From the NCBI RefSeq assembly GCF_001194135.2, contig NC_069003.1, positions 24,097,445 through 24,161,444 on the forward strand: a stretch of 64,000 nt of DNA, written 5' to 3'. Below are positions 19,891-50,176 of the stretch, one piece after another. The notes below the pieces were generated by a model that saw nothing but the letters and a program-made list of their open reading frames with translations, ran no database searches and had not been told where the DNA came from. This DNA comes from Octopus bimaculoides (taxonomy: Eukaryota). Numbering within the stretch: position 1 is the stretch's first letter; every line of letters begins with the position of its first letter. The position numbers were made by a program, and so were the translations under genes.

Positions 19891-20190
19891 TTATTGAAAG
19901 TCAACTTCATGTGAATTAGATCTCAGTCCGCAGAGTTTATGAATATAATTCTCTTGAGAACAATTAAAATAATGCCTGTAGGTCATACAATATTGACAAA
20001 GAAAAGGGATTGAGTCCATGAGCAGTCCAGCTCTTTCTTCATGTTGGCTGAGTTTATCAAGCAGGAGTATTTTCAAGGACTGGTACTTGGCAATAGCATT
20101 GGAATATCGTAGCTTCTGTTTTTCAGTTACACTTTGTTTCAATAGTTGTCTTAGATGGTTCAAAATATTCTCCAAATGAATCATCTGGTT
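19891..20190 (-). CDS. Paralog B terminal exon (NQMIHLE...EVDFQ*)
   Basis: ttttatttctag|AAC CAG ATG acceptor; stop at 19891-19893; AATAAA at about 19869-19874. Confidence 0.9.
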   Translation of the reverse strand, partial: NQMIHLENILNHLRQLLKQSVTEKQKLRYSNAIAKYQSLKILLLDKLSQHEERAGLLMDSIPFLCQYCMTYRHYFNCSQENYIHKLCGLRSNSHEVDFQ

Positions 20191-20633
20191 CTAGAAATAA
20201 AAAAAATTAAAAAATTAAGAAAGAATAAAAAGTTTTGAATGGTACAACAATGCACTATAATACAAAAAAAAAAAATGGACTATATACTCATTGTATTTTA
20301 GTTATCTATAGTCCGATGATATTTCGGAATACAATTCCTTCTTCAGATCTTAGATGGAGTCTCTGCTATAAACTGTTTACCAACAGTCTTTTTTTTGTTT
20401 TTTCTTGAAGTGACACAGTAGTGGTCTCACGAAGCTCCTTTGTTTTCTGTTTTCGTTTCTCATTCTGTCCACGTTTCTTTTTTTATGGCCTGTACCCATA
20501 TATGCATGTATGTATACATATAGATGTAGGTATGTACATATATGTATGGATATATGCATATATTTATATATTATTTATATTATTATATGATCGAATGCCA
20601 CGCATCTTTCTCCAAGTAAGTTTTATCTATCTA

Positions 20634-20676
<43 letters not shown>

Positions 20677-21360
20677 GAGAATATACAAAAAATAACAACA
20701 GACGAGGACAGGTGGTGTAAATAACAAAAGTATATATTAGTATGACGCTCGGGAATACGGAAAGTCTTTGACGTTTCGAGCTACGCTCTTCAACAGAAAG
20801 AATACGGAGACAAGGAGAAAAACACGGAGAAAAAAAATTGAAAAAAATACACACACACACACATATGTCCATCTAAATGTCCACCTACCTCTGTATCAAT
20901 CATCCATCTATTCATGTACCGTTTATATTTCAGTCAATCTTATTTTTCATCAAACTAATTAATCTCTATCAATGACATCAGCAACAAGCTATTAATCACT
21001 CGTACCTGTGGATCTTCCAAACTGAGATAAATCAGGTGTTCAAAAGCCATTGAGAAAATCTCAACCTCTGATACGCTGCTCAAAAGATTGTCACTGTTAA
21101 CATCCAATATGGACTTGAAATACTTCTTGGCGTTATCAAATTCCTCTTTCAGCAGATAGCAGTGTGCAATCAGTTGGAGGACCTTTATCTTTCCGATGTA
21201 GTTTGGGTTTATGTAGTCGTAGATGGCCAAAGCCTCATGCAATGTTGTCAGACTCTCGGAGATTTGACACCTGGAATAAGAAGATGGCAGTGGTGCTTTC
21301 ATGGGGAAATTCAGTCAGAAGAGGCAGTGGTGGTGATTGTGGCAATGGTGATAGTGATAA

Positions 21361-21394
<34 letters not shown>

Positions 21395-21769: not shown

Positions 21770-21805
<36 letters not shown>

Positions 21806-24800
21806 TCATCATCATCATCATCATCATCATCGTTTAACGTCCGCTTTCCATGCTAGCATGGGTTGGACAATTTGACTGAGGACTGGTGAACCAGAAGGCT
21901 GCACCAGGCACCAATCTGATCTGGCAGAGTTTCTACAGCTGGATGCCCTTCTTAACACCAACCACTCCGAGAGTGTAGTGGGTTCTTTTATGTGCCACTG
22001 GGACGAGGGCCAGTCACGTGGTACTGGCAAAGGCCACGCTCAAAATGGTGTTTTTTTTACGTGCCACCTGCACAGGAGCCAGTCCAGCGGCACTGGCAAT
22101 GACCTCGCTCAAATGTTTTTTTTTTCATGTGCCACTGGCACAAGTACCAGTAAGGCAACATATGTGCATGTGAGTGTGTATATATATATATATATATATA
22201 TNNNNNNNNNNNNNNNNNNNNNNNNNNNNNNNNNNNNNNNNNNNNNNNNNNNNNNNNNNNNNNNNNNNNNNNNNNNNNNNNNNNNNNNNNNNNNNNNNNN
22301 NNNNNNNNNNNNNNNNNNNNNNNNNNNNNNNNNNNNNNNNNNNNNNNNNNNNNNNNNNNNNNNNNNNNNNNNNNNNNNNNNNNNNNNNNNNNNNNNNNNN
22401 NNNNNNNNNNNNNNNNNNNNNNNNNNNNNNNNNNNNNNNNNNNNNNNNNNNNNNNNNNNNNNNNNNNNNNNNNNNNNNNNNNNNNNNNNNNNNNNNNNNN
22501 NNNNNNNNNNNNNNNNNNNNNNNNNNNNNNNNNNNNNNNNNNNNNNTGTTCGTGAAATTAATGTGCAAGTGGCTGAGCACTCCACAGACACGGGTACCCT
22601 TAACGTAGTTCTCGGGGATATTCAGCGTGACACAGTGTGACAAGGCTGACCCTTTGAATTACAGGTACAACAGAAACAGGAAGTAAGAGTGAGAGAAAGT
22701 TGTGGTGAAAGAGTACAGCAGGGTTTGCCACCATCCCCTGTCGGAGCCTCGTGGAGCTTTAGGTGTTTTCGCTCAATAAACACTCAGAACGCTCGGTCTG
22801 GGAATCGAAACCGCGATCCTATGACCGCAAGTCCATTGCCCTAACCACTGGGCCATTGCGCCTCCACTATATATAGAATAGTACATACAAAATGGGGACA
22901 AAATAGTATTAGAGTAGTGGGTTTTGAGGTAAAAGAGAGATGAACATAATATTAAATTTAGAGAATTCATGGTTGGCCCATGAAACAGTGTAGTGAAATA
23001 AACAAACTTTTTGATCAGTTCAAATGACTTTAATGTTTAAACCGTTTATCTAAAGCTAACATATTTTTTTGCCTCCATAGCAAACTACTGAAAATGGTCT
23101 TTTAATAGCTCAAATATGTCCTAGATATATTTGAACTGATGGAGAAGTTTTTTTTATATATAAAGAATATTAATGTTTTAATTAATCAATTAATTAATTA
23201 ATAGCACACAGTTGGTTACAGTGATGTTAGTGCAAGTTGATCCAATCAACAGAACAGCCTGCTTGTGAAATTAATGTGCAAATGGTTGAATACTCCACAG
23301 TCATGTTTACTCTTAATGTAGTTCTCTGGGAGATTCAGCATGACACAAAATGTGACAGGCTCTTTGAATTACAGGCATGACTTATTTATGCCAGGTGAGT
23401 GGACTGGAGCAATGTGAAATAAAGAGACTTGCTCAAGAACACAATGCACCCTCTGGATTTGAATTTATGGCCTAGCTATTTTTCACAGAATATACAGGGT
23501 GTCCACAAGGTCTGGATACATGGAGTAAATAAAATCATAACATAAACAATTAAATATAAGAAATAATAATTTCTTAAAATATGTGTTGATCCCCATGTGG
23601 GTACATGGAGTAAATAAAATCACAACATAAACAATTAAATATAAGAAATAATAATTTCTTAAAATATGTGTTGATCCCCATGTGGGTACATGGAGTAAAT
23701 GAAATCACAACATAAACAATTAAATATAAGAAATAATAATTTCTTAAAATATGTGTTGATCCCCATGTGGGTANNNNNNNNNNNNNNNNNNNNNNNNNNN
23801 NNNNNNNNNNNNNNNNNNNNNNNNNNNNNNNNNNNNNNNNNNNNNNNNNAGAATATACAGGGTGTCCACAAGGTCTGGATACATGGAGTAAATAAAATCA
23901 TAACATAAACAATTAAATATAAGAAATAATAATTTCTTAAAATATGTGTTGATCCCCATGTGGGTACATGGAGTAAATAAAATTATAACATAAACAATTA
24001 AATATAAGAAATAATAATTTCTTAAAGTATGTGTTAATCCCCATGTACCCAGACTTTGTGGACACCCTGGAGAATAGGTAAAATAGAATAGATATAAAAT
24101 GGTGTTAGAGATGTAAGTATTGAGATAGGAGTGAGATCAAAGTAAACAAAAAAAGAAATTAATTTTGAAAAGTCTAGAAAACCACCATCATCATCATCAT
24201 CATCATCATCTTCATTTAACGTCCGCTTTCCATGCTGGCATGGGTTAGACAGTTTGACTGGAACTGGTAAGCCATAGAGCTGCACCAGGTTCCAGTCTGA
24301 TTTGGTATGGTTTCTATGGCTGGATGCCCTTCCTAATGCCAACCACTCCGAGAGTGTAATGGGTGCTTTTACGTGCCACCAGCACAGGTGCCATTTACAC
24401 AACACTGATAACTGCCATGACTACAACTACGATTTCACTTGGTTTGACAAGTCTTCTCAGCACAGCATCACCAAATGTCTTGGTCACATTCAAAGATCAT
24501 ACTATCAGCAACAGTCACAATTACAACTTCATGGGTGTCATTTACATGTCATTTACATGTCATTTACATGACACCGACAATGGCCGGCATGATGAGTCTT
24601 CTCAAGCACAACATATCACCGAAGGTCTCATTCACTTGTCATTGCCGCTGTGAGGTTCAACATTTGTAGATCATGCTTCGCCCTATCATCTCATGTCTTT
24701 CTGAGTCTACCTCTACCACAGATTCCCTCCACAGTTAGAGATCGGCACTTCTTCACACAGCTGTCCTCATCCATACGCATCACATGACCATGCCAGTGCA

Positions 24801-25905
24801 GTTGTCTCTCTTGCACACCGCATCTGATGCCTCTTATGCCCGAAGTGAGATGCAGGAAGAGAGAAAAGGACTACTACTTCTAAAGCCCTTTACTTCCTAT
24901 GGAGCCTGGGCAATCAACAGTTTCTCTCTATCGTTCTCAACTTTTCTGCTGCTCTGTAGTTGAATCCCTGTATTTTTACCTCTTCCTCAGGGCTTATTTT
25001 TAGGGTGTCATGTGACCACCCTCCATGCTGGCATGAGTTGGAGAGTCTGACAGGATCCAGTGAGCTGCATCAAGCTCCAAAGTCAGTCTTGGCTTGGTTT
25101 CTACAGCTGGATGCTTTTCCTAACACTAACCCCTTTACATTTTCAAATAAAACTTGAGCAGTGTGAATGGTCAAATAAAAACTACTTACATTCTCAAATA
25201 TATTTGTGCAATGTGAATCAGCACCAAACCAGTGTTCATATGGAGCCAGCCATTATTTTTTTGGATCTTCTCTGCATTGAACAAAAGTTTCAAGGCTATG
25301 TCTGGAGGTAAAATGAAAAATAACAAGTCAGAATCACCCAGATAATACAGTTCTATATTTAAGAGATGAGGAATTATTTACATTATTTACATTATTTACA
25401 TTTGACGGATATTTGTCCTCATCTTGTTTGTTGTTAACACAACGTTTCGGCTGATATACCCTCCAGCCTTCGTCAGGTGTCTTGGAGAAATTTCGAACCT
25501 GGGTTCTCCTTCCTAACGATGTTCCTATTATTATATTATTATTATTATTATTATTACTATTATTAATCAGGCCGCTGCCATGAATCGAACTCGGAACCTT
25601 GGGGTTAGTAGCCCGCACTCTTAACCACTACGCCATATGCCCGTGTTAACAACAAACAAGATGAGGACAAATATCCGTCAAATGTAAATAATGTAAATAA
25701 CCCAGATAATAGTTTAGTCAATTTTAGATTTTTCTTACAAGATTTAAAAATGTATACTTACGGTGTTTCCCACAATTTTGAGACAGGACATTTGCTACAT
25801 TGCAGTATGCTATCACAGATTTCTTAGGGTTTACATTCACTATTTTTAGTCTTTCAACAAGGGAGGCATTATAAAAATGCAATGCTCGTTCCATTTGTGC
25901 ACCAT
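19891..25905 (-). CDS. Paralog B: 3' four exons of a second NB-ARC/TPR family gene; complement join(19891..20190,21006..21270,25190..25301,25762..25905)
   Basis: Canonical splice sites, no stops or frameshifts. Internal exon sizes 144/112/265 nt and phases match gene A exons f-h; terminal exon is 300 vs 318 nt. Clear peptide homology (FYNASL, IAHC..L.E.FDNA, NCSQENY..KLCGLRS). No upstream exons found between 25905 and 30340. Confidence 0.88.
20765..20801 (-). ncRNA. Minimal hammerhead-like motif, family 3, variant core CUGUUGA (decayed copy 47634-47670, +)
   Basis: UCUUU CUGUUGA A GAGC gua GCUC GAA ACGU C AAAGA. Confidence 0.6.
21006..21270 (-). CDS. Paralog B exon h' (CQISESLTTLHEAL...LSLEDPQ)
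   Basis: ttcttattccag|G acceptor, CAG|gtacga donor. Confidence 0.88.
23495..24069. mobile_element. Mariner-type MITE with about 28-bp TIRs and an internal 85-bp tandem amplification
   Basis: ta|cagggtgtccacaaggtctggatacatg ... catgtacccagactttgtggacaccctg; 85-bp units start at 23519, 23604, 23689; the left end is repeated after the gap at about 23850. Confidence 0.8.
25190..25301 (-). CDS. Paralog B exon g' (HIALKLLFNAEKIQKNNGWLH...QIYLRM)
   Basis: ttttacctccag|AC acceptor, AT|gtaagt donor; not in the ORF track; homologous to 46628-46739. Confidence 0.88.
25348..25699 (-). mobile_element. Composite insertion: inverted tail fragment + tRNA-like head + (AAT)n + hammerhead-bearing tail
   Basis: 12-bp TSD acccagataata (25336-25347, 25700-25711); tRNA-like head 25642-25567; tail shared with 31661-31827, 41590-41753 and 50528-50773. 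Confidence 0.8.
25436..25481 (-). ncRNA. Minimal type I hammerhead ribozyme motif, family 1
   Basis: GACAC CUGACGA A GGCUG-gaggguauau-CAGCC GAA ACGU U GUGUU: 5-bp stem I, 5-bp stem II, palindromic ACGU stem III. Confidence 0.75.
25762..25905 (-). CDS. Paralog B exon f' (GAQMERALHFYNASL...CGKH)
   Basis: ctttctatag|AT acceptor, C|gtaagt donor. Confidence 0.88.
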
Positions 25906-25989
25906 CTATAGAAAGCAAAATGAAAATTATGTAAATAATACGAGTTGCACAGATGAAACAAGTCCCTGTACGTTACAATGAAGGCAACC

Positions 25990-26350
25990 TCTGTAAGAAA
26001 TCAACCGCTCCAATATAAAATTACTGAGGCTCAAGACACTGACCCTTACGAAGGAGATGACTAAGGGCTGAGATATCTGGAAGACTGCTGTACTCATGAA
26101 GACCCATTTACCATAGCAGAATTGATACTGGTGCTGGTACCACATAAAAAAGCACTTGTGCTGGTTTCGTGTTAAAAAACACCCAGTACACTCTATGGGG
26201 CCATTGGTGTTAGGAAGGGCATCCAGCTGTGGAAACCATGCCAGAACAGACAATAGAGCCTGGTGCTGCCCCTGGCTTTATCAGCTCTGGTCAAACCATC
26301 CAACCCATGCCAGCATGGAAAATGGAAATTAAATGATGATGATGATGATG
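25990..26350 (+). mobile_element. RTE-type LINE 3' end with (GAT)n tail; related tails at about 21822-22150 (-), 24205-24400 (-), 35960-36152 (+), 44100-44325 (+)
   Basis: LRLKTLTLTKEMTKG*DIWKTAVLMKT followed by the shared ggttggcattaggaagggcatccagctg...ccatgccagcatggaaa..ttaaatgatgatgat tail. Confidence 0.7.
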
Positions 26351-38856: not shown

Positions 38857-41800
38857 TAATAATCCTCTCTACTATAGGCACAAGGCCTGAAATTTTGGAG
38901 GAGGGGACTAGTTGATTACATCAACTCCAGTGTTTCACTGGTACTTAATTTATCAACCCCGAAAGGATGAAAGGCAAAGTCGACTCTGGTGAAATACCAC
39001 TAAGCATTTCATCTGGTGAGCTAACGATTCTGCCAGCTCACTGCATTATTAATAATAGTAAGAATGATGATAATAATAATAATAATAATAATAAGAAGAA
39101 GAAGAAGAAGAAGAAGAATTATTATTTTTATAATGATGATGGTAAAAATGGATGAAATGTTGCTAAAGCATTTTGCTTGGTATGTTAATGATTCTGCCAG
39201 TTTGCCACCCTAACATATAATGATGATAATATTAATGATGGTGGTGGTGGTGGTGGTGGTAGCGGTGGCAGTGATGACAACGATGACAATGATGTTTTCT
39301 GCAAAAGCTTTAGTGTGTTGACCTTTATGGTTTTATTAGTATCAAGCTAATAATTACAGTGTATTTTTTTTTTTTGCAAATTCCCATTATTCTCATCCTA
39401 TAAATAACAATTCTCTACATCCTGCTGACTCAGAATATATATATATGTATATATATATATCACCCACTGATGTAGAATACGTGCTTAGACACTGAAGTAG
39501 GATCTATTCCTTCCCCACTCCGACAGGATAAATGTGTTTCCCACTGATAGGTGCAGTGACATGGCTGTGTGGTTAAGATACTTGCTTTACAACCACTTGG
39601 TTTCATGTTCAATCCATCAATTCCTGGTATTTTGACCCTCTTCTTCTCTTTTATGACCTCCACTCTTTTTTTCTCTCCTGGGACCTACTTAGTCCCAGGA
39701 GCTAAGACAACACCGTGTTTCAAATAGACGTCATCAGTGACGTCATCGTCATTGTTGTCATCATCGAGGTCATTGACATTGTCATCATTATCATCAACAT
39801 CATCGTCGTTGTTGTCATCGTCATCATCATTGTTGTCATCATCATTGTCGTCGTCATCATTGTCGTTGTCGTCGTCGCCGTCGTTGTCGTCATCATTGTC
39901 ATCGTCATCATCATTGCCGTCATTGTCGTTGTTGTCATCGTCATTGTCATCGGCGTCGTTGTCATTGTCGTCGTCATCATTGTCATTGTTGTCATCATCA
40001 TCACTATTGTCGTCGTCATCATTGTCATTGTTGTTGTTGTTGTCATCATCATCATTGTTGTCATCGTCATTGTCGTTGTCATCATTGTCATCGTCTGTCA
40101 TCGGCGTCGTTGTCATTGTCGTCGTCATCATTGTCATTGTTGTCATCATCATCACTATTGTTGTCATCGTCATTGGCGTCGTTGTCATTGTCGTCGTCAT
40201 CATTGTCATTGTTGTTGTTGTTGTCATCATCATTGTCGTCGCCGTCATTGTCGTTGTTGTCATCGTCATTGTCATCGGCGTCGTTGTCATTGTCGTTGTC
40301 ATCATCATCATCATTGTTGTCGTCGTCATTGTCGTCGCCGTCATTGTCGTTGTCGTCGCCGTCATTGTCATTGTCGTCGCCGTCATTGTCATTGTCGTTG
40401 TCAAACTTTTGTAAATTGAGAGTCCTTTGGAGAGTGACACGAGTCAACAGGTATCCTGTGGATCTGGGTCACTGAAAGATGTTCTGGTGGTCAGCGAGGG
40501 GAGAGAGAGAGAGAGAGAGAGAGAGAGGAGGAAGNNNNNNNNNNNNNNNNNNNNNNNNNNNNNNNNNNNNNNNNNNNNNNNNNNNNNNNNNNNNNNNNNN
40601 NNNNNNNNNNNNNNNNNNNNNNNNNNNNNNNNNNNNNNNNNNNNNNNNNNNNNNNNNNNNNNNNNNNNNNNNNNNNNNNNNNNNNNNNNNNNNAGAGAGG
40701 AAGAGATTCAGGGTGATGCAGAACATTGTTGCTAATAGCTGTCTCCATTACCTTAGAGATGTGATGATGATGATGATGATGATGATAAATCTGCAGATAA
40801 TAGTGGTGTAAACCAGGGGTTTTCAAACTTTTTGACTCGCGGACCCCTTTATATTTCAGGCTTTACCTTAGGGACCCGCTTATAAACGCTTATGGAATTT
40901 ATACATAAATATTTGCTTAAAATAACATATTTTTGCATTTATTTATTTAACAGTATTTAACGAATAGGTTTATTGTCAATTAAAAGATTTCGATTAAAAA
41001 ACATATATAAAATCAAATTACCCATAAAAAGTATTTGCTGTCCACGGACCCCCTGTGGTCCGCAGACCACAGTTTGAAAACCCCTGGTGTAAACAATAGT
41101 GACAAGTCTAAGAAAGCTACTGTTGTTGATGATGATGATTGTGATGATAGCAGTGGTGATGAAGATGATGATAATTTCAGTAATGATGGTGATAATAGGG
41201 TGGTGTTGGTGATGATGATGATAATGATGATGACGTTAATGATGGTGGTAATGATGGTGTCAGTGATAGTAGTAATAGTGGTGGTGATGATGATGATGAT
41301 AATGATGATGATGATGATTGTTCAATTTCTTCATCAGTTCTGCAGAAATAGGCTACAACATGGTCGTCAAAGATGTCAGTCCTCAGATGGTGCTACACGT
41401 GAAGATCAACTCTGCCTCTATCATGGCCTACAACCTCTCGCTCATTGGTAATAACTGCATTATGTTCTTTAATTGGTGGTGGTGGGCATGGTATTGTTGT
41501 CGATGGCGACAGTATTGAGGGTCTTGGTGGTGGTGGTGGTGGTGGTGGTGTTATGGCATTGTTGTCATTGTTGGTGGTGGTGGTAGTGGAATGAGAACCC
41601 AGATTTGAAATTTCCCCAAGGCACCTGAAGATGGCTGGAGGGTACATCAGTTGAAACATTGTGTTAACAACAAACAAGATGAGGACAAATATCCGTCAAA
41701 TGTAAATAATGTAAATAATATACATACTTCCTCATCTCTTAAATATAGAACTGTATAATATAAATAAATGAATTAAAACTTTGTTAATGTGATATTAATG

Positions 41801-42787
41801 GTTAACAGGAGGATTTAATTAGGTTTCATGAGCTTAATTACCTCTAGACAATCTTATGAAACCATTATGTCTTTTTTCTGTTCAGGTGGGTTTTTTTTTA
41901 TTTATCCATATAAAGGCGACATTTCTTTTTGCAGGTTATTATGATAGATGTGAAAAATTACTGTCAGAAAACTTGGGGAAAATTTCATCACATCATCCCA
42001 GTCTAGCTGTGATGTTAAATACAATGGGTATTAATTATGAAAGGAGTGAGTATAATCGTTTTTTTTTTTTATTGTTGTATTTCAGGATGGTCATTGTTTT
42101 TTTTGTTTTTTTTTGCCGCATAAACACACATACTATATATTCATTCTTCGCTCGTTTTTTACTGTTTTTATTTTAACTCGTGTCCATTGTCTGGAAATCT
42201 TTCATCACACATCTGTGACCTCTTCAGTGACACTCTCCACCCTCGTGTGCTCCTGCTCTGCTTTGTCCATTCTCTGTTTCAACACACGGTTTCACACAAG
42301 GAGTCTTGCAACACAAATTCATGAACATAAAAGTTTTTATTTATTTATTTAAAAAATATTTTGATATTTTTTGGTTAGATCCTGGGGTTGGATGGTGGTA
42401 CTGAGGCATATCTGTGTAGTAAGAAGCATGCTTCCCAACCACATGGTTCTGGGTTCAGTCCTATTGCATGGAACCTTGGGCAAGTGTCTTCTGTTATAGC
42501 TTCGGGCCAACCAAATCCTTTTGAGCAGAATGGGTTTGGTAAGATGGAAACTAAATGTCTGGCAGATGTGTGTGTGTGTCTGTCTGTCTGTCTGACCCCC
42601 ATCACCCACATTGATAACAGTGTTGGTGTGTTTACATACCTGTAACTTAGTGGTTTGGCAAAAGAAACCAATAAAATAAGTACCGGGCTTAAAAAAAAAG
42701 CACTGGGGTTGATTCTTCAAGGTGCTGCCCCAGCATGGTCCCAGTCTAATGACTGCAACAAATAAACAACAAAGGAAAAGATAACAG

Positions 42788-42824
<37 letters not shown>

Positions 42825-45528
42825 TCTTTATGTAAGTGTTTGTCACCCATTACTTCTTAGTGTTGGTTTATTTACATCCCTATGTCATAGCAGTTTGGTA
42901 GAATAAAATCCACTTACTGGGATGCACCAGGCTTAAATACATATGTACTGGGGTTGATTTATCTGACTAAACCCTTTGAAGCAGTGCTCCAGACTGGCCG
43001 CAGTCCTATAACTGAAATCAGTGAAAGATAAAAAATAAAAAGATGTCTATATATATATATATATATAAGGAAAATAGGACAAGGTAGAAAATGCTAAAAT
43101 AATTTTATCATGAAGAATATTTAGAGTAAAGCATGAAAAACAAATTAAATTGTAGAAAAATTAAATGAAATGTTTTTTTAAAAATATTTCCATAGCGTTC
43201 ACAACAGTAAGAGAACGAGAGAGAGAGAGAAAGAGAGACAGAGAAAAGGAAAATGTCCCTTGTGTTTGAAAACTAAGGAAATACTTTAAATAAAAGACAT
43301 TTCATTTAATTTTTCCACAATTTAATTGTTTTTCATGCTTTANNNNNNNNNNNNNNNNNNNNNNNNNNNNNNNNNNNNNNNNNNNNNNNNNNNNNNNNNN
43401 NNNNNNNNNNNNNNNNNNNNNNNNNNNNNNNNNNNNNNNNNNNNNNNNNNNNNNNNNNNNNNNNNNNNNNNNNNNNNNNNNNNNNNNNNNNNNNNNNNNN
43501 NNNNNNNNNNNNNNNNNNNNNNNNNNNNNNNNNNNNNNNNNNNNNNNNNNNNNNNNNNNNNNNNNNNNNNNNNNNNNNNNNNNNNNNNNNNNNNNNNNNN
43601 NNNNNNNNNNNNNNNNNNNNNNNNNNNNNNNNNNNNNNNNNNNNNNNNNNNNNNNNNNNNNNNNNNNNNNNNNNNNNNNNNNNNNNNNNNNNNNNNNNNN
43701 NNNNNNNNNNNNNNNNNNNNNNNNNNNNNNNNNNNNNNNNNNNNNNNNNNNNNNNNNNNNNNNNNNNNNNNNNNNNNNNNNNNNNNNNNNNNNNNNNNNN
43801 NNNNNNNNNNNNNNNNNNNNNNNNNNNNNNNNNNNNNNNNNNNATATACGTTGGGCTTCTTCCAGTTTACATCTACCAAATCTACTCACAAGGCTTTGGT
43901 CGGCCCGAGGCTATAGTAGAAGACACTTGCCTGAGGTGACACACAGTGGGACTGAACCCAGGACCGTGTGGTTGGTAAGCAAACTACTTACCACACAGCC
44001 ACTCCTGCGCCTATATATATATATATATGGGTCAAGAAGACCTGTACCCCACAGCAGAAATGTTAAGACTGAACCTTCTGGTTGTTTTAAGCACCTGTAG
44101 TGGTGCCATGTAAGAGTACCCATGTGGTGCTCATTCCATGCCACGTAAAAGCATCCAGCACACTTTGTAAAGTTGTTGGCATTAGGAAGGGCATCCAAGC
44201 TGAAGAAACCATGCCAAATTAGACTGGGGTCTGGTATAGCTACCCAGCCTCCCAGCTCTGGTCACATCATCCAACCCACGCCAGGATGGACAATAGACGT
44301 TATATGGTGATGATGATGATGATGGTAATAATGGAAATTCTTTTTTGTATCCTTTTTGTATTTTTTGACTTCAGTTTTAAATTTCTGATCCTGCCTCATG
44401 TGTAAGGAGATAGTTACCTCCCTTTGCATTAACTGCCATCCAGAGGTCACCACATGTGTCTTCAGGCATTTTTACCTGATATTTTCTTTTCTCTTTCTGC
44501 AGATGGCTTACAGTACGACGAAGCATTCATTTTTTATAATGCTTCTCTAAGGGAAAGAATGAAGGTTGCTGCAATAAATCCTAGACTATCTGTCGTGGCA
44601 AATTGTAATGTAGCAAAGATAATATCTCGTGATCGTGGAAACCATGGTAAGTATTCTTTTGTCAAGTCTTACTTCTAAAATCTATGAGGCGGGTGCAGGA
44701 AAGTTCCTGGCTTTAAAGATATCGCAAAAGGCCTTGCTTGGTGGATCAACTTTCTGAGTTCTTTTACAGGGCTTAGAAAAACTGAAGGACTGCTGCAATA
44801 AGTGTGTAAATCTGAGAGGGGAATATCTTGAGTAAAATCATAATTTTCTTTTACCAAAAGCCAGGAACTTTTCAGTACCCCCTCGTACATATATAATCAC
44901 ATGTTTTTTGAGAGGGTGCTGAAATAGGATATTGAAAAAGGCATGTTTGGAGGCCCAACCTCCTGAGTTCTTTTATAGGGGTTAGAAAAACTGAAGGACT
45001 GCTGCAATAAGTGTGTGAATCTGAGAGGGGAATATCTTGAATAAAATCATAATTCTCTGATCCTCCTGTATTTTCTTTTACCCAGAGCCAGGAACTTTTC
45101 AGCACCTCCTCGAACTTTTAGTACAAGCCCACAGACATTCAGTCTGCTAGAAATAGCAGCAGAATCTCATTGAACTCATGCCTAAGAGCGAACATAATTG
45201 CGTAGTGTGTGGTTAAGAGATGTTTACTTCTCAACCATGTGGTTTTGGGGTCTGTCTCACTTTGGGGGTACCTTATATTATGTCACAGACTGACAAAAGC
45301 ACGGTACCCAGAAGTGAGTGTCGGTCTGTATTCTCTTGGCTTTGTTGGAACTTCAATGATGCATTTTTAATTTGGGAAAGAATTTAAATATAAAGTCAGT
45401 CGCATTTATACATACACTAGAAATTTCTCTAATTTAATTTTTTTTACACACTGGCTTCCTGATAAAATTCTTGTAAAAGATTTTTATCCTTTTTTGAATT
45501 TATATAGATAGATAGATAGATAGATAGA

Positions 45529-45561
<33 letters not shown>

Positions 45562-45607
45562 GCATACATACATACATACATACTTACACACCACNNNNNN
45601 NNNNAGA

Positions 45608-45640
<33 letters not shown>

Positions 45641-47229
45641 GCATACATACATACATACATACTTACACACCACACACACACACACACACACACAAGCATG
45701 TATATGTATGTACATACATACATTCTCATACACACACACACAGAAGCATGCATGCATACATACATGTATATACACACACACACACACACACATGCAAGCA
45801 TGTATATGCATACATACATAATAATCTTAATAGCAGTTCTACAAGAAGTAACACTTGAGGACTACCACACATTTACACTCTCATGGTAGAGCCTCCACTT
45901 TTTATGAAATTCCTCTTGCTTGCTTTTATTGTATGATCTGGTTTTTTTTTTTTTTTCAATTAGATATCTCTCAAACACTAAGTATCTAAAATGTTTGAAT
46001 CTGAGAGTGGTTTTTAACTCATTTTATATATAAAAAATTTTGCTAATAATATTAGCAAGTCAAAGATGCCGTCAGTATATGTGTTTCTTCTCAGTCCGAA
46101 CAGAATGAGCTGTGGGTCAAGTTTCATGCTATGAACATGTTGTTGTTGGCACTCCGTCGCTTACGACGTCGAGGGTTCCAGTTGATCTGATCAACAGAAC
46201 AGCCTGCTCATGAAATTAACGTGCAAGTGGCTGAGCACTCCACAGACACGTGTACCCTTAACGTAGTTCAGGGGATATTCAGCGTGACACAGTGTGACAA
46301 GGCTGACCCTTTGAATTACAGGCACAACAAAAACAGGAAGTAAGAGTGAGAGAAAGTTGTGGTGAAAGAGTACAGCAGGGTTCACCACCATCCCCTGCCG
46401 GAGCCTTGTGGAGCTTTTAGGTGTTTTCGCTCAATAAACACTCACAACACCCGGTCTGGGAATCGAAACCGCAATCCTATGACTGCGAGTTCGCTGCCCT
46501 AACCACTGGGCCATTGCGCCTCCACTATGAACATGTATGCACTTTTCATACAGCAAATCTAAGAAGCGTTGCCAGAAGGCCTTTTTATTTATTTATTTTT
46601 TTTTTGTCATTCTTATTTTTCTTCCAGAAACAGCACTAAAATTCCTATTGAAATCAAAGGCCATCCTGAAGAAACAAAGTTGGCACCATGTGATTACTTC
46701 TGAACTGTTGAACCAGACTGGTCAAGTGTATTTGAGGATGTAAGTACTTTCATTTGGTCTGTCATATTAGTGAAGAATATTTATTTAGCCATTGGTCAAG
46801 TTATATTTGAAGATTTGTTTTTATTTGACCAACTAGATTTTTTTGGTCAAGGTCAAGAGAATTTGAGAATGTAGTTGTTTTCCTTTTTAAGTGATTGTAT
46901 TGCTCAAATCCCATTCGAAAATGTAATTACCTCCATTAGACCAACCATGCTAGTCAAGTGTGTTAACTCCACTATTCTTGTAGCACCACCACCGCCACCA
47001 CCATCACAACCACACATGACTATCACCACTACTAACTCAGTACCGTCAAACAATAAGTGCTACAAGCTGTTGCTGCTGCTGCTGCAGCTACTATGTCTTC
47101 TACTGTTTCTACTACTACTGCCGCCTCCGCCACTGCTACTACTACTATTGCTACTACTGCAACAGCTGCTACTACTACTAGTATATTACTGCCACTGTTG
47201 TTACTGCTGCTGCTGTTACTACAACAACA

Positions 47230-47269
<40 letters not shown>

Positions 47270-48024
47270 TTACTGCTGCTGCTGCTGCTGCTAACAACAT
47301 CAGTGCCAAAAAAGCTGACAGGGAAGTCTCACTGCACTTGCCTAACCTACTAAAAATAGCAGCCAAATCGCCTTCCAAACACATTTTTTATCATCACCAT
47401 CATCATTATCATTATCGTTGTAATCATATCCTCATCATCATCACCTTTATTGTCACATACTCTCACATACACACGCACGCGCACCTTCATTTTGGTATCA
47501 GCACTACTTTATTATCTCCCCTTCTTCCCAGCTCTCCTGTCTGACCACCTCTGTCTGGCCATCGCCATGATTGACTGCTAGCTACTAAAGCTTTCTTTTT
47601 TTCTTATTCTCCCTCTGTTTATTTTCTCATGTTCCTTTCTGCTGCAGAGCGTAGGCTCGAAACATAAAGGACTTTCTCACCTTCCTAATACCCCTGTTTG
47701 TTCTTTACACACCTTTTTTGTAAATTCCAACTCAATATAGTTGTCACCATCATCAACACTAGCACCAGCAGCAGCAGCAATACCACTGCCACCACTACCA
47801 CTATGACTGTTGACATCATCATCATCATCATCATTACCACCACCACCGGCACCATCACTATTATCACCACCACTCTGACAACACCATCGCTATTATTACT
47901 ATGACCATCAAAATCCCAACTATTACCACCCCAACAGCAACAACATTATCAGCTCAGTTGCTACAACCACTATCATCACTAATACTATAACAACCCTGCT
48001 GCTGTCACCACCACCACCACCACC

Positions 48025-48055
<31 letters not shown>

Positions 48056-48940
48056 CCACCACCACCAAAACCACCACCACCACCACCATCACCACCACNN
48101 NNNNNNNNNNNNNNNNNNNNNNNNNNNNNNNNNNNNNNNNNNNNNNNNNNNNNNNNNNNNNNNNNNNNNNNNNNNNNNNNNNNNNNNNNNNNNNNNNNNN
48201 NNNNNNNNNNNNNNNNNNNNNNNNNNNNNNNNNNNNNNNNNNNNNNNNNNNNNNNNNNNNNNNNNATCACCACAACTGCCACGACGACGACCACCACCAC
48301 CACCATCACCACTACTGCCGCCACTACCATCTCTATCACCATCACCACAACTGCCACGACGACGACCACCACCACCACCATCAACCCCAACCACTATGCT
48401 CTGTTACTCATTAACCTTACCTTATCATATTACAGGCATGACATGACCAATGCCCTAGCAGCATTCCTGGAGTCCTTGTATATCTACAACAAGATTGATC
48501 CCAACAACAGTGCCAAAATTGAGGTCCTTAATATGATTGCCCACTGCAATCTTCTCCAAGAGTCATTCGATAATGCCAGAGAATATTTCCAGGATGTTCT
48601 GCAAGTCAACACCAGAGCATCTATGAGCTGTGTCCTAGAAGTCGAAGGTTACGCAATAGCTATGGAACATCTTGTTTATCTCAGTTTTGAGAATTGTGAG
48701 GTATGGAAACGACTGTGCTTTATTGTTTGTTGTTTGCTGCAATAGTTGTTGTTGCTGATGATATCACTTCTATATATATATATTCATGTATATGGCTGTG
48801 TAGTAAGAAGCTTGCTTTCCAACCCCATGGTTCCAGGTTCAGTCCCACTGCTAGAACCTTGAGCAAGTGTCATTTGTTTATAGCTGTGGGCTGACTAAAG
48901 TCTTGTGAGTGGATTAGGTAGACGGAAACTGAAAGAAGCT

Positions 48941-48980
<40 letters not shown>

Positions 48981-50176
48981 ACCGTAAAAACCCATGTAAT
49001 TTGCACACCTGTGTAATTTACGCAGGTGATTTTCAGGATAAGGATTGTTAGAAAAAAAAGCTTCTACTCATGTAAAGTTTGCACCCAAAAGTTTTCAGAA
49101 TTGCCGATATGGCCAAGGGGGAAAGGGTTTCAATTTAGTTGTATTTAGCATAATTTCACTTACTTATGATTAGATTTTATTAAATTTTCATTAAATAAAA
49201 ATAATTTCTGTTTAACAGGTATCACATCAAAAGCTATCAAATTACGAAGTGTTTGTGTTGTTTATAATAAGCTTTATCTTACATTTCTTGCCCACAAGAG
49301 ATTATGTCTGATTTTTAGCCTGCTTCTGTATGTCTTCTCAAATCGTGATCACAGGAAAAGCAGTTGATAATTCTTATCGACAAAAACAAAGCTGATAAAT
49401 ACACACAAGTGTTGCAAAATAAGTTTAATTACCAATAAACATCAGCTTAGATGACACTTTACTCAACTGACAGAAGAAGTTAGCCGATCAAACTGATTAT
49501 GTAAACAGAATTCTAATTGGTCAAAAGTGCCTTCTTGTCTCAAGCTCTGATTTTCGGCCTATTCTTGTTGGAAACTTTGATACGGAGTATCGAAATTTTA
49601 ATCCCTTTCACACATATAAAATGTCAAGCAAACTTAAAAATTTGTCTTCATGTTCTGAGTTTAGATTTCACCGAGGTCAACTTTGCCCTTCATCCTTTCG
49701 GCATCGATAAAATAAACACCAGCTGAGTACCGGGGTTGATGTTATTGACTTACCCCAACCCCCGTCCCCAAAATTGCTGATCTTGTACCAAAATTTGAAA
49801 TATATATATATAAATGTTTGTTTATGAAATTTAATTCTATATATATATTTTTTTCTAGACCCAGATGGCTGCTTTGGAGACTCTTTTAGAAGAATTACGT
49901 CAGATCAATATACTTAGCGTTAATTTAGAACAAAAAATGCAATATTCAAGTGCCATTGCCAAGTACCAAGGACTGAAAATAAAACTTCTTAAAAAATTCG
50001 ACTACAACAGCAAACGAACTGGCCTCCTTATAAATTCACTTCCTGTAATTTGTGACTTCTGCCAGGATTACAAACGTTATGTAAATTGCTCACAAGAGAA
50101 TTATACTTTTAAGTTATGTGGATTGAGATCAATTATAAATGACTTTGATCTCCAAGAATTAAGTCTTCAAGATTAA
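30340..50176 (+). CDS. Gene A: 5'-incomplete STAND/NB-ARC-like NTPase + winged helix + TPR protein (NLR-like); join(30340..31365,33479..33635,36726..36873,41338..41447,41935..42045,44503..44646,46628..46739,48436..48700,49859..50176)
   Basis: Nine exons with canonical AG/GT sites and consistent phases (0,1,2,1,1,1,2,0); 2391 nt, open to TAA at 50174-50176. Walker B-like KICIFDDF, GxP motif ACGLPG, winged-helix-like LKLLSYFPGRF and VQELIR, then TPR-like helices. AATAAA at 50398-50403. Confidence 0.9.
31507..31660 (+). mobile_element. LINE ORF2 C-terminal remnant joined to the hammerhead-bearing tail
   Basis: SPFYRYFHGHCSAELSSLVPP..YQRSTR resembles C-termini of CR1/Jockey-group ORF2 (from memory; not searched). 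Confidence 0.5.
32900..33170 (-). mobile_element. RTE-clade LINE 3' fragment (related copy at 15740-15915, +)
   Basis: KWKWIGSTIRKDPPNAAKSALQWKPDGYRKRGRPKNSWHRS. Confidence 0.75.
33479..33635 (+). CDS. Gene A exon b (IATKASQILW...LTNLP)
   Basis: Polypyrimidine tract ttttcag|ATA; donor G|gtatga; phase 0 to 1. Confidence 0.88.
34030..34420 (+). mobile_element. CORE-type tRNA SINE with internal (TA/TG)n tract; other copies at about 653-860, 6320-6600, 9090-9360, 9630-10040, 12777-13012, 15284-15450, 17516-17670, 31835-32200, 42400-42780, 43845-44012, 48785-48940, 51020-51720, 60380-60625
   Basis: Shared head ggctgtgtggtaagaagcttgc...ggttcagtcccactg, CORE-like accttgggcaagt, shared tail ggcggtgctccagcatggcc...gactgaaacaagtaaaag. 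Confidence 0.85.
34560..35658. repeat. 40-bp minisatellite in an intron of gene A (spans a gap)
   Basis: Unit ttatgtggctctttctattatatgggtgtttctgtttcta repeats with a 40-bp period on both sides of the N run. Confidence 0.95.
36726..36873 (+). CDS. Gene A exon c, TPR (GLGGYTEAISYYEKAMNVL...YHMQGKYVESL)
   Basis: ctttgcag|GT acceptor, AA|gtaggt donor; TPR-like YTEAISYYEKA; not in the ORF track. Confidence 0.9.
37427..38860. repeat. (AAT/GAT)n compound microsatellite with gap
   Basis: Directly visible. Confidence 0.95.
39720..40402. repeat. Cryptic trinucleotide (GTC/ATC/GTT/ATT) repeat with higher-order blocks
   Basis: Recurrent block cattgtcatcggcgtcgttgtcattgtcgtcgtcatcattgtcattgttgtcatc; low-complexity ORFs in several frames. 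Confidence 0.9.
40814..41086. mobile_element. hAT-type MITE
   Basis: TIRs CAGGGGTTTCAAAC / GTTTGAAAACCCCTG; perfect 8-bp TSD gtgtaaac (40806-40813, 41087-41094). Confidence 0.9.
41338..41447 (+). CDS. Gene A exon d (SAEIGYNMVV...AYNLSLI)
   Basis: ttcttcatcag|T acceptor, G|gtaata donor; 110 nt bridges phase 2 to 1. Confidence 0.8.
41935..42045 (+). CDS. Gene A exon e, TPR (GYYDRCEKLL...AVMLNTMGINYER)
   Basis: tttttgcag|GT acceptor, A|gtgagt donor; HPSLAVMLNTMGINY is TPR-like. Confidence 0.9.
44503..44646 (+). CDS. Gene A exon f, TPR (GLQYDEAFIFYNASL...RGNH)
   Basis: ctttctgcag|AT acceptor, G|gtaagt donor; 144 nt, same size as paralog exon 25762-25905. Confidence 0.92.
44685..45112. mobile_element. 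Two tandem mariner-type MITE copies (44685-44885 and about 44910-45112)
   Basis: TIR-like gaggcgggtgcaggaaagttcctggc / gccaggaacttttcagtaccccctcg with TA flanks on the first copy; shared internal sequence. Confidence 0.7.
46628..46739 (+). CDS. Gene A exon g, TPR (ETALKFLLKSKAIL...GQVYLRM)
   Basis: tttcttccag|AA acceptor, AT|gtaagt donor; 112 nt, same size as paralog exon 25190-25301. Confidence 0.92.
48436..48700 (+). CDS. Gene A exon h, TPR (HDMTNALAAFLESL...LSFENCE)
   Basis: attacag|G acceptor, GAG|gtatgg donor; 265 nt, same size as paralog exon 21006-21270. Confidence 0.92.
49859..50176 (+). CDS. Gene A terminal exon with C-x2-C-x8-C-x9-C motif
   Basis: ttttctag|ACC CAG ATG acceptor; stop TAA; about 52 of 99 residues identical to the paralog terminal exon by manual count. 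Confidence 0.92.
   Translation, partial: TQMAALETLLEELRQINILSVNLEQKMQYSSAIAKYQGLKIKLLKKFDYNSKRTGLLINSLPVICDFCQDYKRYVNCSQENYTFKLCGLRSIINDFDLQELSLQD

What the first reader, a model, noticed from the sequence alone, without database searches (positions are those of the whole stretch)
19891..50176. NLR-like STAND NTPase-TPR gene family in a cephalopod-type genome
Seen: two paralogs share four homologous terminal exons (three of identical size, same phases) at roughly 50% protein identity in the terminal exon, both with intact frames. Gene A has NB-ARC-like motifs (Walker B, GxP, winged helix) followed by about 450 aa of mostly TPR-like sequence. Established: STAND-TPR is the sensor architecture of fungal NLRs, bacterial Avs-type proteins and expanded cnidarian/bivalve families. 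Inference: a locally duplicated intracellular immune or cell-death sensor family, probably annotated only as uncharacterised or TPR protein.
Basis: partly seen in the sequence, partly recalled or inferred. Interest (0 to 1): 0.8.

Follow-up and report, generated by a model that had tools for sequence, protein, structure and literature searches.

The report
Octopus NB-ARC–TPR gene plus fragment
This stretch of an octopus genome holds one nearly complete gene and one inverted tail-end copy of a mollusc-wide, uncharacterised family of NB-ARC-type ATPase–TPR proteins; these resemble NLR-type immune sensors in architecture, but an immune role is not shown.

Summary
Gene A (+ strand) has nine GT/AG-bounded exons from 30340 to 50176, encoding 794 aa. 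A second set of four terminal exons lies on the − strand (25905 to 19891). Exon sizes are 144/112/265/294 nt against 144/112/265/312 nt, phases match, and identity is 39–53%.

Every assembly gap falls in an intron. Six of the nine gaps are unresolved repeats with matching flanks.

The family call is right at profile level. The N-terminal module is homologous to NB-ARC STAND ATPases (Apaf-1, plant NLRs, PH0952, AfsR), and TPR_12 repeats follow.

Three corrections:
- The Walker A exon is missing upstream of gene A. It is expected at the gap 29307–29406. An intact copy sits on the opposite strand at 8648–8469.
- "Gene B" is only a 3′ fragment, not a full paralog.
- Neither these proteins nor their relatives carry a recognisable effector domain, there is no Avs match, and two NB-ARC switch residues are substituted. 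The immune or cell-death role is therefore analogy only.

Relatives occur across molluscs and one hemichordate, all annotated as uncharacterised. Octopus vulgaris has at least three tandem copies. Exon-scale mosaicism and ω≈1 in the terminal exons point to a fast-evolving cluster.

Verdict: a new member of a known kind, of moderate interest.

The parts
30340..31365 (+). Gene A exon 2 (342 aa). It encodes most of the NOD module: Walker B KICIFDDF, LILSGG at the sensor-1 position, GLPGL (GxP), the winged-helix region with FQVQELIR at the MHD position, and a conserved helical linker.
   Evidence: AG acceptor and GTAAGT donor, phase 0/0. 87-89% aa identity to O. sinensis and O. vulgaris proteins. 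Family profile aligns to Apaf-1 residues 124-448.
33479..33635 (+). Gene A exon 3
36726..36873 (+). Gene A exon 4 (TPR region)
41338..41447 (+). Gene A exon 5 (TPR region)
41935..42045 (+). Gene A exon 6 (TPR region). The next intron contains gap 43343-43843.
44503..44646 (+). Gene A exon 7 (144 nt), the divergent A' type
   Evidence: 44-55% aa identity to other octopus loci.
46628..46739 (+). Gene A exon 8 (112 nt)
48436..48700 (+). Gene A exon 9 (265 nt), with a TPR_12 match
49865..50176 (+). Gene A exon 10 (312 nt including the stop). It encodes a helical hairpin followed by an invariant CxxC-x8-C-x9-C motif.
25762..25905 (-). Fragment B exon 7 (144 nt)
25190..25301 (-). Fragment B exon 8 (112 nt)
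21006..21270 (-). Fragment B exon 9 (265 nt), with a TPR_12 match
   Evidence: dS 0.23-0.52 against other octopus loci.
19891..20184 (-). Fragment B exon 10 (294 nt including the stop). It is 72-76% aa identical to the terminal exons of O. vulgaris genes.
8469..8648 (-). Orphan exon-1-like exon. ATG start, FVGRHDERE motif, Walker A GLPYVGKTS and a GTAAGA donor in phase 0. It sits on a 975-bp contig between two gaps.
   Evidence: 74-78% aa identity to exon 1 of the O. vulgaris, O. sinensis and O. bimaculoides genes.
27124..27581 (+). Conserved non-coding element, tandemly duplicated here. In other octopus loci it lies 1.4-4.5 kb upstream of exon 1 on the gene's strand, so it marks gene A's 5' flank.
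29307..29406 (.). Assembly gap at the position where gene A's exon 1 (Walker A) is expected
   Evidence: The e1-e2 intron is about 1.1-2.0 kb in the other loci. There is no e1 in the assembled 25906-30339.

Best explanation
The region is part of an octopus gene cluster encoding NOD-TPR proteins of the NB-ARC (AP-ATPase) branch of STAND NTPases. The family is found across molluscs and in a hemichordate.

Gene A (30340-50176, + strand) is a near-complete member. It has the NOD from Walker B onward, a helical linker, about 400 aa of TPR_12-type repeats, and a roughly 100-aa C-terminal module with four invariant cysteines. Its Walker A exon is not in the assembled sequence and is most likely hidden in, or lost at, the gap 29307-29406.

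'Gene B' (25905-19891, - strand) is an inverted partial duplicate of the last four exons. An orphan Walker A exon lies at 8648-8469 (- strand). It is either a misplaced small contig or another remnant.

Inferred mechanism, by homology with Apaf-1, plant NLRs, MalT and AfsR. The TPR array holds the ADP-bound NOD closed. A ligand bound by the TPRs releases it, nucleotide exchange follows, and the NOD oligomerises into a signalling platform. There is no N-terminal effector domain, so output would run through partner proteins or through the C-terminal Cys4 module. An innate-immune or cell-death role is plausible from the architecture, clustering and rapid evolution, but it is not demonstrated.

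The stated confidence applies mainly to the identity and anatomy. I put the immune-sensor part alone at about 0.35.
For: Gene models and exon homology.

Family-level evidence:
- A phmmer search of the O. sinensis homolog against 1.84 billion representatives gives 55 hits. They come from molluscs and one hemichordate.
- Walker A GxxxxGK[ST] and GLP[LG] about 155 aa later recur in these hits.
- 28 of 30 members match TPR_12 and 20 of 30 match Pfam NB-ARC, best E = 2.4e-11.
- The NOD-only profile matches PH0952 (2.5e-13), ADR1-like, NRC1-4, Sr35 and ZAR1 (about 1e-10 to 1e-12), Apaf-1 residues 124-448 (2.2e-11) and AfsR.

The window's own product:
- TPR_12 scores 68 bits against a cut-off of 30.
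- NB-ARC scores 22.0 against 23.5, ATPase_2 27.8, with weaker AAA_16, NPHP3_N and nSTAND6 matches.

Cluster structure:
- O. vulgaris has three or more tandem same-strand genes, and the two loci I mapped exon by exon show the same 10 exons.
- The conserved upstream element lies in + orientation 2.76 kb before e2, matching the spacing in O. bimaculoides.

Selection and mosaicism:
- dN/dS is 0.25-0.46 for all window parts, including B.
- Per-exon dS is mosaic: e2 0.05-0.20 and B e9-e10 0.2-0.5, against 0.5-2.3 for the other exons.
- ω is 1.08 [0.68-1.87] for e7-e10 between O. vulgaris paralogs, against 0.44-0.48 for e2-e6.

Literature: NACHT/NB-ARC proteins with TPRs are described as Nod-like receptors in cnidarians (PMC7642931).
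Against: - No Walker A exon lies in cis for gene A, and its e6-e7 join crosses an unverified gap.
- The single-sequence NB-ARC score is just below Pfam's cut-off.
- The sensor-1 arginine is replaced (LILSGG), and the MHD histidine is Gln in the octopus proteins (FQVQELIR). The nucleotide switch may therefore work differently or be degenerate.
- No effector domain appears in the window's product or in the relatives scanned, and no Avs model matches.
- AlphaFold models were poor (pLDDT 44 and 55). Foldseek gave only generic AAA+/ORC/RFC hits, with CED-4 and Dark further down the list.
- No transcript or expression evidence exists for the window's genes. Exact look-ups of its products found nothing.
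- All other octopus paralogs have B-type rather than A'-type 3' exons.
Confidence: 0.7

Rival explanations
1. The scaffold misrepresents the locus. The real full-length gene would be e1 + e2-e6 + the B-type e7-e10, as in every other octopus paralog. The divergent A' exons (44503-50176) would then be the orphan fragment. This requires the block 29407-43342 to be inverted or misjoined.
For: - The block is bounded by the two gaps that lack flank continuity, 29307 and 43343.
- All O. vulgaris and O. bimaculoides genes have B-like 3' exons: 60-76% aa identity against 44-55% for A'.
- Intronic DNA flanking B e7 and e9 still aligns to the O. bimaculoides locus, while the A' flanks do not.
- If the block were flipped, e1 would be expected inside gap 43343-43843.
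- e6 ends in phase 1, which is compatible with either e7.
Against: - The conserved upstream element at 27124-27581 is in + orientation, 2.76 kb before e2(+). This is the same order and spacing as in O. bimaculoides (2.72 kb) and similar to O. vulgaris (3.7 kb). Inversion would put it antisense inside intron 6.
- The three gaps inside the block are repeat-bridged in consistent orientation, so four contigs would all have to be flipped together.
- B e7 and e8 are as far from canonical genes in dS (about 1-2) as A' e7 and e8. 'B-like' closeness therefore comes mainly from e9-e10, which fits gene conversion.
Confidence: 0.2
2. The family is a non-immune regulatory or scaffolding STAND protein, for example a ciliary or trafficking scaffold of the NPHP3 or kinesin-light-chain type, or a signalling ATPase. 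Its resemblance to NLRs would be architectural only.
For: - No death-fold, TIR or other effector domain appears in the window's product or in the relatives scanned.
- The TPRs are closest to kinesin light chain.
- There are weak NPHP3_N matches, and TPR_NPHP3 matches in 14 of 30 relatives.
- Degenerate sensor-1 and MHD residues.
Against: - The gene is not a conserved single-copy ortholog. Only 55 representatives exist, with lineage-specific tandem copies.
- The window shows fragments and exon-scale mosaicism, and ω is about 1 in the terminal exons between O. vulgaris paralogs.
- NPHP3_N scores 16 bits against a cut-off of 24.8.
Confidence: 0.2
3. The window holds only decaying remnants of the cluster. 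Gene A would have lost its P-loop exon and be non-functional. Fragment B and the orphan e1 would be dead pieces left by rearrangement.
For: - e1 is absent in cis for gene A.
- B lacks e1-e6, and the orphan e1 lacks e2 downstream.
- No product of the window is on record in the protein collection.
- Transposons and repeats are abundant in the window.
Against: - All 14 exons keep open frames and canonical splice sites across 794 + 271 + 60 codons.
- dN/dS is 0.25-0.46, and 0.37 on the B branch, rather than about 1.
- The missing e1 coincides with an assembly gap.
Confidence: 0.15

Closest known systems
Apaf-1 / CED-4 / plant NLR NB-ARC domain (AP-ATPase clade of STAND, Pfam PF00931)
   Same: - FVGR-x-E lead-in, Walker A (in exon 1), Walker B hhhhDD and the GLPL-type motif.
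- The helical and winged-helix domains are collinear with Apaf-1 residues 124-448.
- Family-profile E-values are 1e-10 to 1e-12.
   Different: - The sensor is TPR rather than WD40 or LRR.
- There is no CARD, CC or TIR effector. Only about 20 residues precede the FVGR lead-in of the NOD, and about 45 precede the P-loop.
- The sensor-1 Arg and the MHD His are substituted in the octopus proteins.
- The single-sequence Pfam score is just under threshold (22.0 against 23.5).
NB-ARC/NACHT-TPR 'Nod-like receptors' of cnidarians (Hydra, Acropora) and fungal NB-ARC-TPR NLRs
   Same: NOD + TPR architecture, lineage-specific expansion and clustering (PMC7642931, PMC4986451 and PMC3879445 for context).
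   Different: - Many of those proteins carry N-terminal Death, DED, TIR or HET-type effector domains, and this family has none.
- I did not test direct orthology.
- The phmmer hits I checked by source name were all from molluscs or the hemichordate.
Prokaryotic NOD-TPR STANDs: PH0952 (PDB 6mfv), AfsR (8k60), MalT, FxSxx-system and HaaT-type TPR proteins
   Same: - PH0952 is the best PDB match of the NOD profile (2.5e-13).
- AfsR aligns over profile positions 7-330.
- UniRef names the O. bimaculoides homolog 'MalT-like TPR region'.
- NCBIfam FxSxx_TPR and HaaT hits appear in relatives.
   Different: - There is no DNA-binding output domain.
- The gene is eukaryotic with 10 exons.
- All matches are far below the equivalog cut-offs.
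Bacterial Avs (antiviral STAND) proteins
   Same: General logic only: a STAND ATPase with a repeat-type sensor.
   Different: PADLOC found no Avs model. The only hits were a generic TPR model and two weak matches to candidate models, PDC-S27 and PDC-S01. There is no nuclease, protease or other effector domain.
Nephrocystin-3 (NPHP3) and kinesin light chain TPRs
   Same: TPR_12-type repeats. KLC is the best single-sequence PDB hit. There is a weak NPHP3_N match to the P-loop region.
   Different: NPHP3_N scores 16 bits against a cut-off of 24.8. This family is multi-copy and fast-evolving rather than a conserved single ortholog. KLC has no NTPase domain.

Membership tests
STAND NTPase, NB-ARC (AP-ATPase) clade | Walker A P-loop GxxxxGK[ST] | tested here: inconclusive
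   It is absent from gene A as assembled. There is no e1 in 25906-30339, and gap 29307-29406 lies at the expected place. An intact e1 with GLPYVGKTS exists at 8648-8469 on the - strand. The orthologous exon is present 1.1-2 kb upstream of e2 in all other octopus loci.
STAND NTPase, NB-ARC (AP-ATPase) clade | Walker B hhhhD[D/E] | tested here: met
   KICIFDDF in exon 2. It aligns with the LLILDD of Apaf-1 in the profile alignment.
STAND NTPase, NB-ARC (AP-ATPase) clade | Sensor-1 arginine after the third core strand (the TTR/RNBS-B motif) | tested here: not met
   Octopus proteins have IILILSGG, and most bivalve relatives have TSTT. Only some relatives have TSRR.
STAND NTPase, NB-ARC (AP-ATPase) clade | GxP / GLPL motif in the helical domain (ARC1) | tested here: met
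   CGLPGLL in exon 2. G and P are invariant or nearly so across 30 relatives.
STAND NTPase, NB-ARC (AP-ATPase) clade | Winged-helix domain ending in an MHD/LHD histidine that contacts ADP | tested here: not met
   The family profile aligns through Apaf-1 'RYYLHDL'. Bivalve relatives have RFNIHGILRD, but the window and other octopus proteins have NFQVQELIR, with Gln in place of His.
STAND NTPase, NB-ARC (AP-ATPase) clade | Significant sequence-profile match to NB-ARC | tested here: met
   - Single sequence: 22.0 bits against the Pfam cut-off of 23.5, which is sub-threshold.
- Family level: 20 of 30 relatives match NB-ARC, best 2.4e-11.
- The NOD profile hits plant NLRs and Apaf-1 at 1e-10 to 1e-12.
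- The window's homolog links to those relatives by phmmer at 1e-12 to 1e-54.
TPR repeat proteins (TPR_12 type) | Pfam TPR_12 above the gathering score | tested here: met
   68.3 bits against 30.1, in three stretches, for the spliced product. The isolated e9 of A and of B give 25.8 and 23.3 bits.
NLR sensu stricto (NACHT + LRR) | NACHT domain and leucine-rich repeats | tested here: not met
   There is no NACHT or LRR hit in the window's product. NACHT matches only 2 of 30 distant relatives.
NLR-like tripartite immune receptors (broad sense) | Effector or adaptor domain (CARD, PYD, Death, DED, TIR, CC, HET...) | tested here: not met
   Only about 20 residues precede the FVGR lead-in of the NOD, and about 45 precede the P-loop. 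No effector domain appears in the product or in the 30 + 7 relatives scanned. The C-terminal Cys4 module is uncharacterised.
NLR-like tripartite immune receptors (broad sense) | Immune function: induction on infection, ligand sensing, oligomerisation | not testable with these tools
   No expression or biochemical data are available here.
Bacterial Avs (AVAST) antiviral STANDs | Match to Avs family models | tested here: not met
   A PADLOC scan of three family members gave only a generic TPR model and weak PDC-S27 and PDC-S01 matches.
Nephrocystin-3 | NPHP3_N and TPR_NPHP3 above cut-off, and a single conserved ortholog | tested here: not met
   NPHP3_N scores 16 bits against 24.8. The family is multi-copy and lineage-specific.

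The most novel reading that the evidence does not exclude
Molluscs, including cephalopods, carry a distinct effector-less class of NB-ARC-TPR sensors. Its output module would be the C-terminal CxxC/Cys4 domain rather than an N-terminal death-fold or TIR domain. In octopus the nucleotide switch would be rewired (sensor-1 Arg lost, MHD His to Gln). The tandem copies would diversify their terminal TPR/Cys4 exons under positive selection, while exon 2 is homogenised by gene conversion. Together this would make a previously undescribed intracellular recognition system in an animal group whose pattern-recognition repertoire is poorly known.
Probability: 0.12. Interest if true: 0.65.

Novelty: new member of a known kind. 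Interest (0 to 1): 0.35.

Why it matters
Intracellular pattern recognition in cephalopods is little understood. One review says that PRR-mediated pathways are obscure in the group (PMC11359984). A clustered, fast-evolving NB-ARC–TPR family gives a concrete set of candidate cytosolic sensors to test in octopus hemocytes. It also adds molluscs to the lineages with TPR-type NOD proteins, alongside cnidarians, fungi and prokaryotes.

There are practical points for annotation:
- Current annotations of this family are often truncated. The O. bimaculoides LOC106871096 model loses its whole ATPase domain to an assembly gap.
- Several O. vulgaris models start at an internal Met and lack the P-loop exon.
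- Domain-based surveys will therefore under-count the family.

Nothing here changes general understanding of STAND proteins.

Tried and rejected
1. Searching the A' terminal exons (277 aa) in the 5.8-billion protein index found nothing. The tool needs shared 5-mers, so this is not evidence of absence.
2. AlphaFold of the NOD module, using the O. sinensis proxy and an 11-row alignment, gave pLDDT 44. Foldseek against the PDB returned only generic AAA+/ORC/RFC hits, with CED-4 and Dark lower in the list (TM 0.2-0.3). I use this only as weak support for a P-loop fold.
3. AlphaFold of exon 10 gave pLDDT 55. It shows a helical hairpin, but the Cys-rich part is unresolved, so a zinc-binding fold is neither shown nor excluded.
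4. The spliced window product could not be submitted to structure prediction or to contig look-up. Exact look-ups of window ORFs and of four candidate isoforms found nothing. The source species and assembly could therefore not be fixed. O. bimaculoides or a close relative is suggested by e2 dS = 0.05 and by the same gap-ridden assembly style.
5. Inversion of block 8386-29306 would bring the orphan e1 about 1.1 kb upstream of e2. I rejected this as the main model because the conserved upstream element inside that block is already in + orientation.
6. The orphan e1 as the start of a next tandem gene on the - strand: its 11.2-kb distance from B e10 resembles the 10.6-kb O. vulgaris intergenic spacing. 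However, there is no e2 downstream and no upstream element nearby. This stays unresolved.
7. Intron homology tests across gaps 29307 and 43343 hit only dispersed SINE-like repeats and were not informative.
8. PADLOC and NCBIfam gave no Avs or other defence-system membership.
9. Literature searches found no paper describing this family in cephalopods.

Full report
**What is in the sequence**

The window is AT-rich, repeat-laden and broken by 23 runs of N. Its coding matches are to Octopus proteins.

Homology to O. sinensis LOC115226970 (P0001), O. bimaculoides LOC106871096 (P0002) and O. vulgaris LOC118767588 (P0004), together with inspection of the splice sites, gives the following model for gene A on the + strand:
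- e2 30340-31365
- e3 33479-33635
- e4 36726-36873
- e5 41338-41447
- e6 41935-42045
- e7 44503-44646
- e8 46628-46739
- e9 48436-48700
- e10 49865-50176

Every boundary is AG/GT. The phases chain correctly, and the 2385-nt CDS has no internal stop (794 aa).

On the − strand there is a second set of the last four exons: 25905-25762, 25301-25190, 21270-21006 and 20184-19891. Their sizes are 144/112/265/294 nt, against 144/112/265/312 nt in gene A. The phases are identical, identity is 52/39/48/53%, and E-values run from 2e-5 to 2.6e-30 within the window.

**The gaps**

No gap touches an exon. The gap-free O. vulgaris loci have the same ten exons on one strand, so nothing internal is missing from gene A.

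Six gaps have the same repeat on both flanks in the same orientation:
- 23774: an 85-bp minisatellite
- 34791: a 40-bp minisatellite
- 37908: (TAA)n
- 40535: (GA)n
- 45595: (ATAC)n
- 48099: (CAA/CCA)n

These are unresolved intronic repeats, and the flanking contigs are correctly ordered.

Three gaps (22202, 29307, 43343) have no such support. Gap 43343-43843 sits in the e6-e7 intron of gene A, and gap 29307-29406 sits where exon 1 should be.

**The missing first exon**

In the O. sinensis, O. vulgaris and O. bimaculoides loci, a 183-bp exon 1 lies 1.1-2.0 kb upstream of e2 on the same strand. It encodes the start codon, the FVGRxxE lead-in and the Walker A loop GLPYVGKTS.

In the window nothing like it exists in the assembled 25906-30339. 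An intact copy lies at 8648-8469 on the − strand, with an ATG, an open frame and a GTAAGA donor in phase 0. It sits on a 975-bp contig bounded by two gaps.

A conserved non-coding element helps place gene A's 5′ end. It lies 1.4-4.5 kb upstream of exon 1 in the other loci. In the window it is found once, tandemly duplicated, at 27124-27581 in + orientation. That is 2.76 kb before e2, against 2.72 kb in O. bimaculoides.

Gene A's 5′ flank is therefore collinear with the canonical loci, and exon 1 is expected at or near gap 29307-29406. The orphan exon at 8648 may be that exon on a misplaced contig, since its insertion into the gap would give a roughly 1.0-kb intron. Alternatively it is a remnant of another copy. 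I could not decide between these.

**Fragment B**

No e1-e6 homologs lie upstream of B's e7. Only 1.2 kb of gap-free sequence separates B's e7 from the element that marks gene A's 5′ flank, in divergent orientation. That junction lies inside a single contig (23850-29306). The inverted juxtaposition is therefore not a scaffolding artefact, unless the contig itself is chimeric through the SINE-like repeats at 26030-26633.

B is thus a 3′ partial copy rather than a full paralog. It keeps open frames and splice sites. dN/dS is 0.29-0.46 against other loci and 0.37 on its own branch, so it is not a long-dead pseudogene.

**Which 3′ end is canonical**

All other octopus genes have B-like terminal exons, at 60-76% aa identity. 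The exons spliced into gene A (A′) reach only 44-55%.

Per-exon synonymous divergence shows a mosaic:
- A e2: 0.05-0.20
- B e9: 0.23-0.52
- B e10: 0.20
- e1, e3-e8 of either copy, and A′ e9-e10: 0.5-2.3

Exon 2 is 92-96% identical at the nucleotide level along its whole length, while neighbouring exons are about 75-80% identical.

The simplest reading is exon-scale gene conversion or recombination among clustered paralogs. An alternative cannot be excluded: the scaffold may have inverted the e2-e6 block, and the true gene may end in the B exons. The orientation of the upstream element argues against this, and I give it 0.2.

**What family it is**

On its own, the window's product plus the orphan e1 passes Pfam only for TPR_12 (68 bits). 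The ATPase matches are all just sub-threshold: ATPase_2 27.8, AAA_16 23.6, NB-ARC 22.0 against a cut-off of 23.5, plus NPHP3_N and nSTAND6.

The family-level evidence is decisive:
- An exhaustive phmmer search with P0001 found 55 representatives. Those with source names come from Octopus, Argonauta, Lottia, Haliotis, Batillaria, Pecten, Pinctada, Saccostrea, Solemya, Potamilus and the hemichordate Glandiceps. Several others are unnamed transcripts.
- These share Walker A and a GLPL-type motif about 155 residues later.
- 20 of 30 hit Pfam NB-ARC, best 2.4e-11, and 28 of 30 hit TPR_12.
- A profile of the NOD part alone matches PH0952, ADR1-like, NRC1-4, Sr35, ZAR1, Apaf-1 (residues 124-448, covering NBD-HD1-WHD) and AfsR, at 1e-8 to 1e-13.

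Membership of the NB-ARC branch of STAND ATPases is therefore well supported. Strict NLR (NACHT-LRR), Avs and NPHP3 memberships were tested and not met.

Two canonical switch residues are substituted in the octopus proteins. The sensor-1 Arg position reads LSGG, and the MHD His position reads VQE.

No relative carries a recognisable effector domain. The only extra feature is the exon-10 module. It has a predicted helical hairpin followed by CxxC-x8-C-x9-C, which is invariant in the seven octopus sequences aligned. The CxxC recurs just after the TPRs in many mollusc relatives.

**How it probably works**

Shown: the domain order NOD, helical linker, TPR array, Cys-rich tail; the tandem clustering; and the evolutionary pattern.

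Inferred from Apaf-1, plant NLRs, MalT and AfsR: this is an autoinhibited ADP-bound monomer, opened by a ligand that binds the TPRs. Nucleotide exchange and oligomerisation follow. Because no effector domain is present, signalling would need partners or the C-terminal module.

Between two O. vulgaris paralogs, ω is 0.44-0.48 for e2-e6 but 1.08 [0.68-1.87] for e7-e10. This fits either relaxed or diversifying selection on a recognition surface.

An immune or cell-death role is a reasonable guess, which I put at about 0.35. It has no direct support here.

**Comparison and novelty**

NACHT/NB-ARC proteins with TPR sensors are already described in cnidarians and fungi (PMC7642931, PMC4986451, PMC3879445). 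AP-ATPase–TPR proteins are common in prokaryotic conflict systems (PMC8195603).

I found no paper on this family in cephalopods, and database names are uninformative. This is a new member of a known kind.

The useful details are the cluster's mosaic evolution, the effector-less architecture with a Cys4 tail, and the fact that assembly gaps and annotation choices hide the ATPase domain in several public models.

Noticed in passing
window 8469-8648 (- strand): An intact exon-1-like exon (ATG, Walker A GLPYVGKTS, phase-0 GT donor) of the same gene family. It lies on the strand opposite gene A, on a 975-bp contig between two gaps. It is either a misplaced contig or an orphan remnant.
   Followed up: yes
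window 27124-27581 (+): A tandemly duplicated non-coding element of about 250 bp. It is conserved at 75-82% and single-copy per locus, 1.4-4.5 kb upstream of exon 1 in O. bimaculoides, O. sinensis and O. vulgaris paralogs. It could be a promoter, an enhancer or an untranslated first exon of the family.
   Followed up: partly
window 30340-31365 (exon 2) versus the other exons: Exon 2 is 92-96% identical in DNA to paralogs and orthologs in three Octopus species (dS 0.05-0.20), while flanking exons have dS 0.5-0.9. Fragment B's e9-e10 show the same effect (dS 0.2-0.5). This suggests exon-scale gene conversion within the cluster.
   Followed up: partly
L004 and L005 (O. vulgaris OX597836.1, 42.48-42.62 Mb): At least three same-strand tandem paralogs. 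dN/dS is about 1.08 in exons 7-10 between two of them, against 0.44-0.48 in exons 2-6. L005 also has a duplicated exon 10 (30383-30673 and 30941-31228).
   Followed up: partly
L001 9219-9978 (O. bimaculoides CM046623.1): A 760-N assembly gap removes most of exon 2 of LOC106871096. The public protein model (P0002) therefore starts at an internal Met and lacks the whole ATPase domain. Several O. vulgaris models likewise start at MYNTFTN inside exon 2 and omit the P-loop exon.
   Followed up: yes
window 49865-50176 and 19891-20184 (exon 10): Four invariant cysteines (CxxC-x8-C-x9-C) follow a predicted helical hairpin. A CxxC at the equivalent place after the TPRs recurs in gastropod and bivalve relatives. 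This may be a small zinc-binding module, but the AlphaFold model was not confident there.
   Followed up: partly
window 54447-55523 (+): An intact 358-aa ORF of a Tc1/mariner-type transposase (Pfam DDE_3, 37.8 bits, plus HTH). A copy with 77% DNA identity sits in an intron of the O. bimaculoides homolog (L001 10892-11887).
   Followed up: partly
window 63581-63886 (-): A 101-aa ORF with a weak GIY-YIG nuclease match (17 bits, below cut-off). It may be a fragment of a Penelope-like element.
   Followed up: no
window 23513-24046 and 34551-35657: An 85-bp and a 40-bp minisatellite (95-98% unit identity) each straddle an assembly gap. They explain why the assembler broke there and show that the flanking contigs are in the right order and orientation.
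   Followed up: yes
L006/L007 (Logan SRR29271470, SRR29271484): An intronless 1195-aa ORF on 4.6-4.8 kb contigs, 29% identical to the octopus protein, with the same NOD-TPR-CxxC order and a long low-complexity tail. It is probably a transcript of a distant family member, from an organism I did not identify.
   Followed up: no
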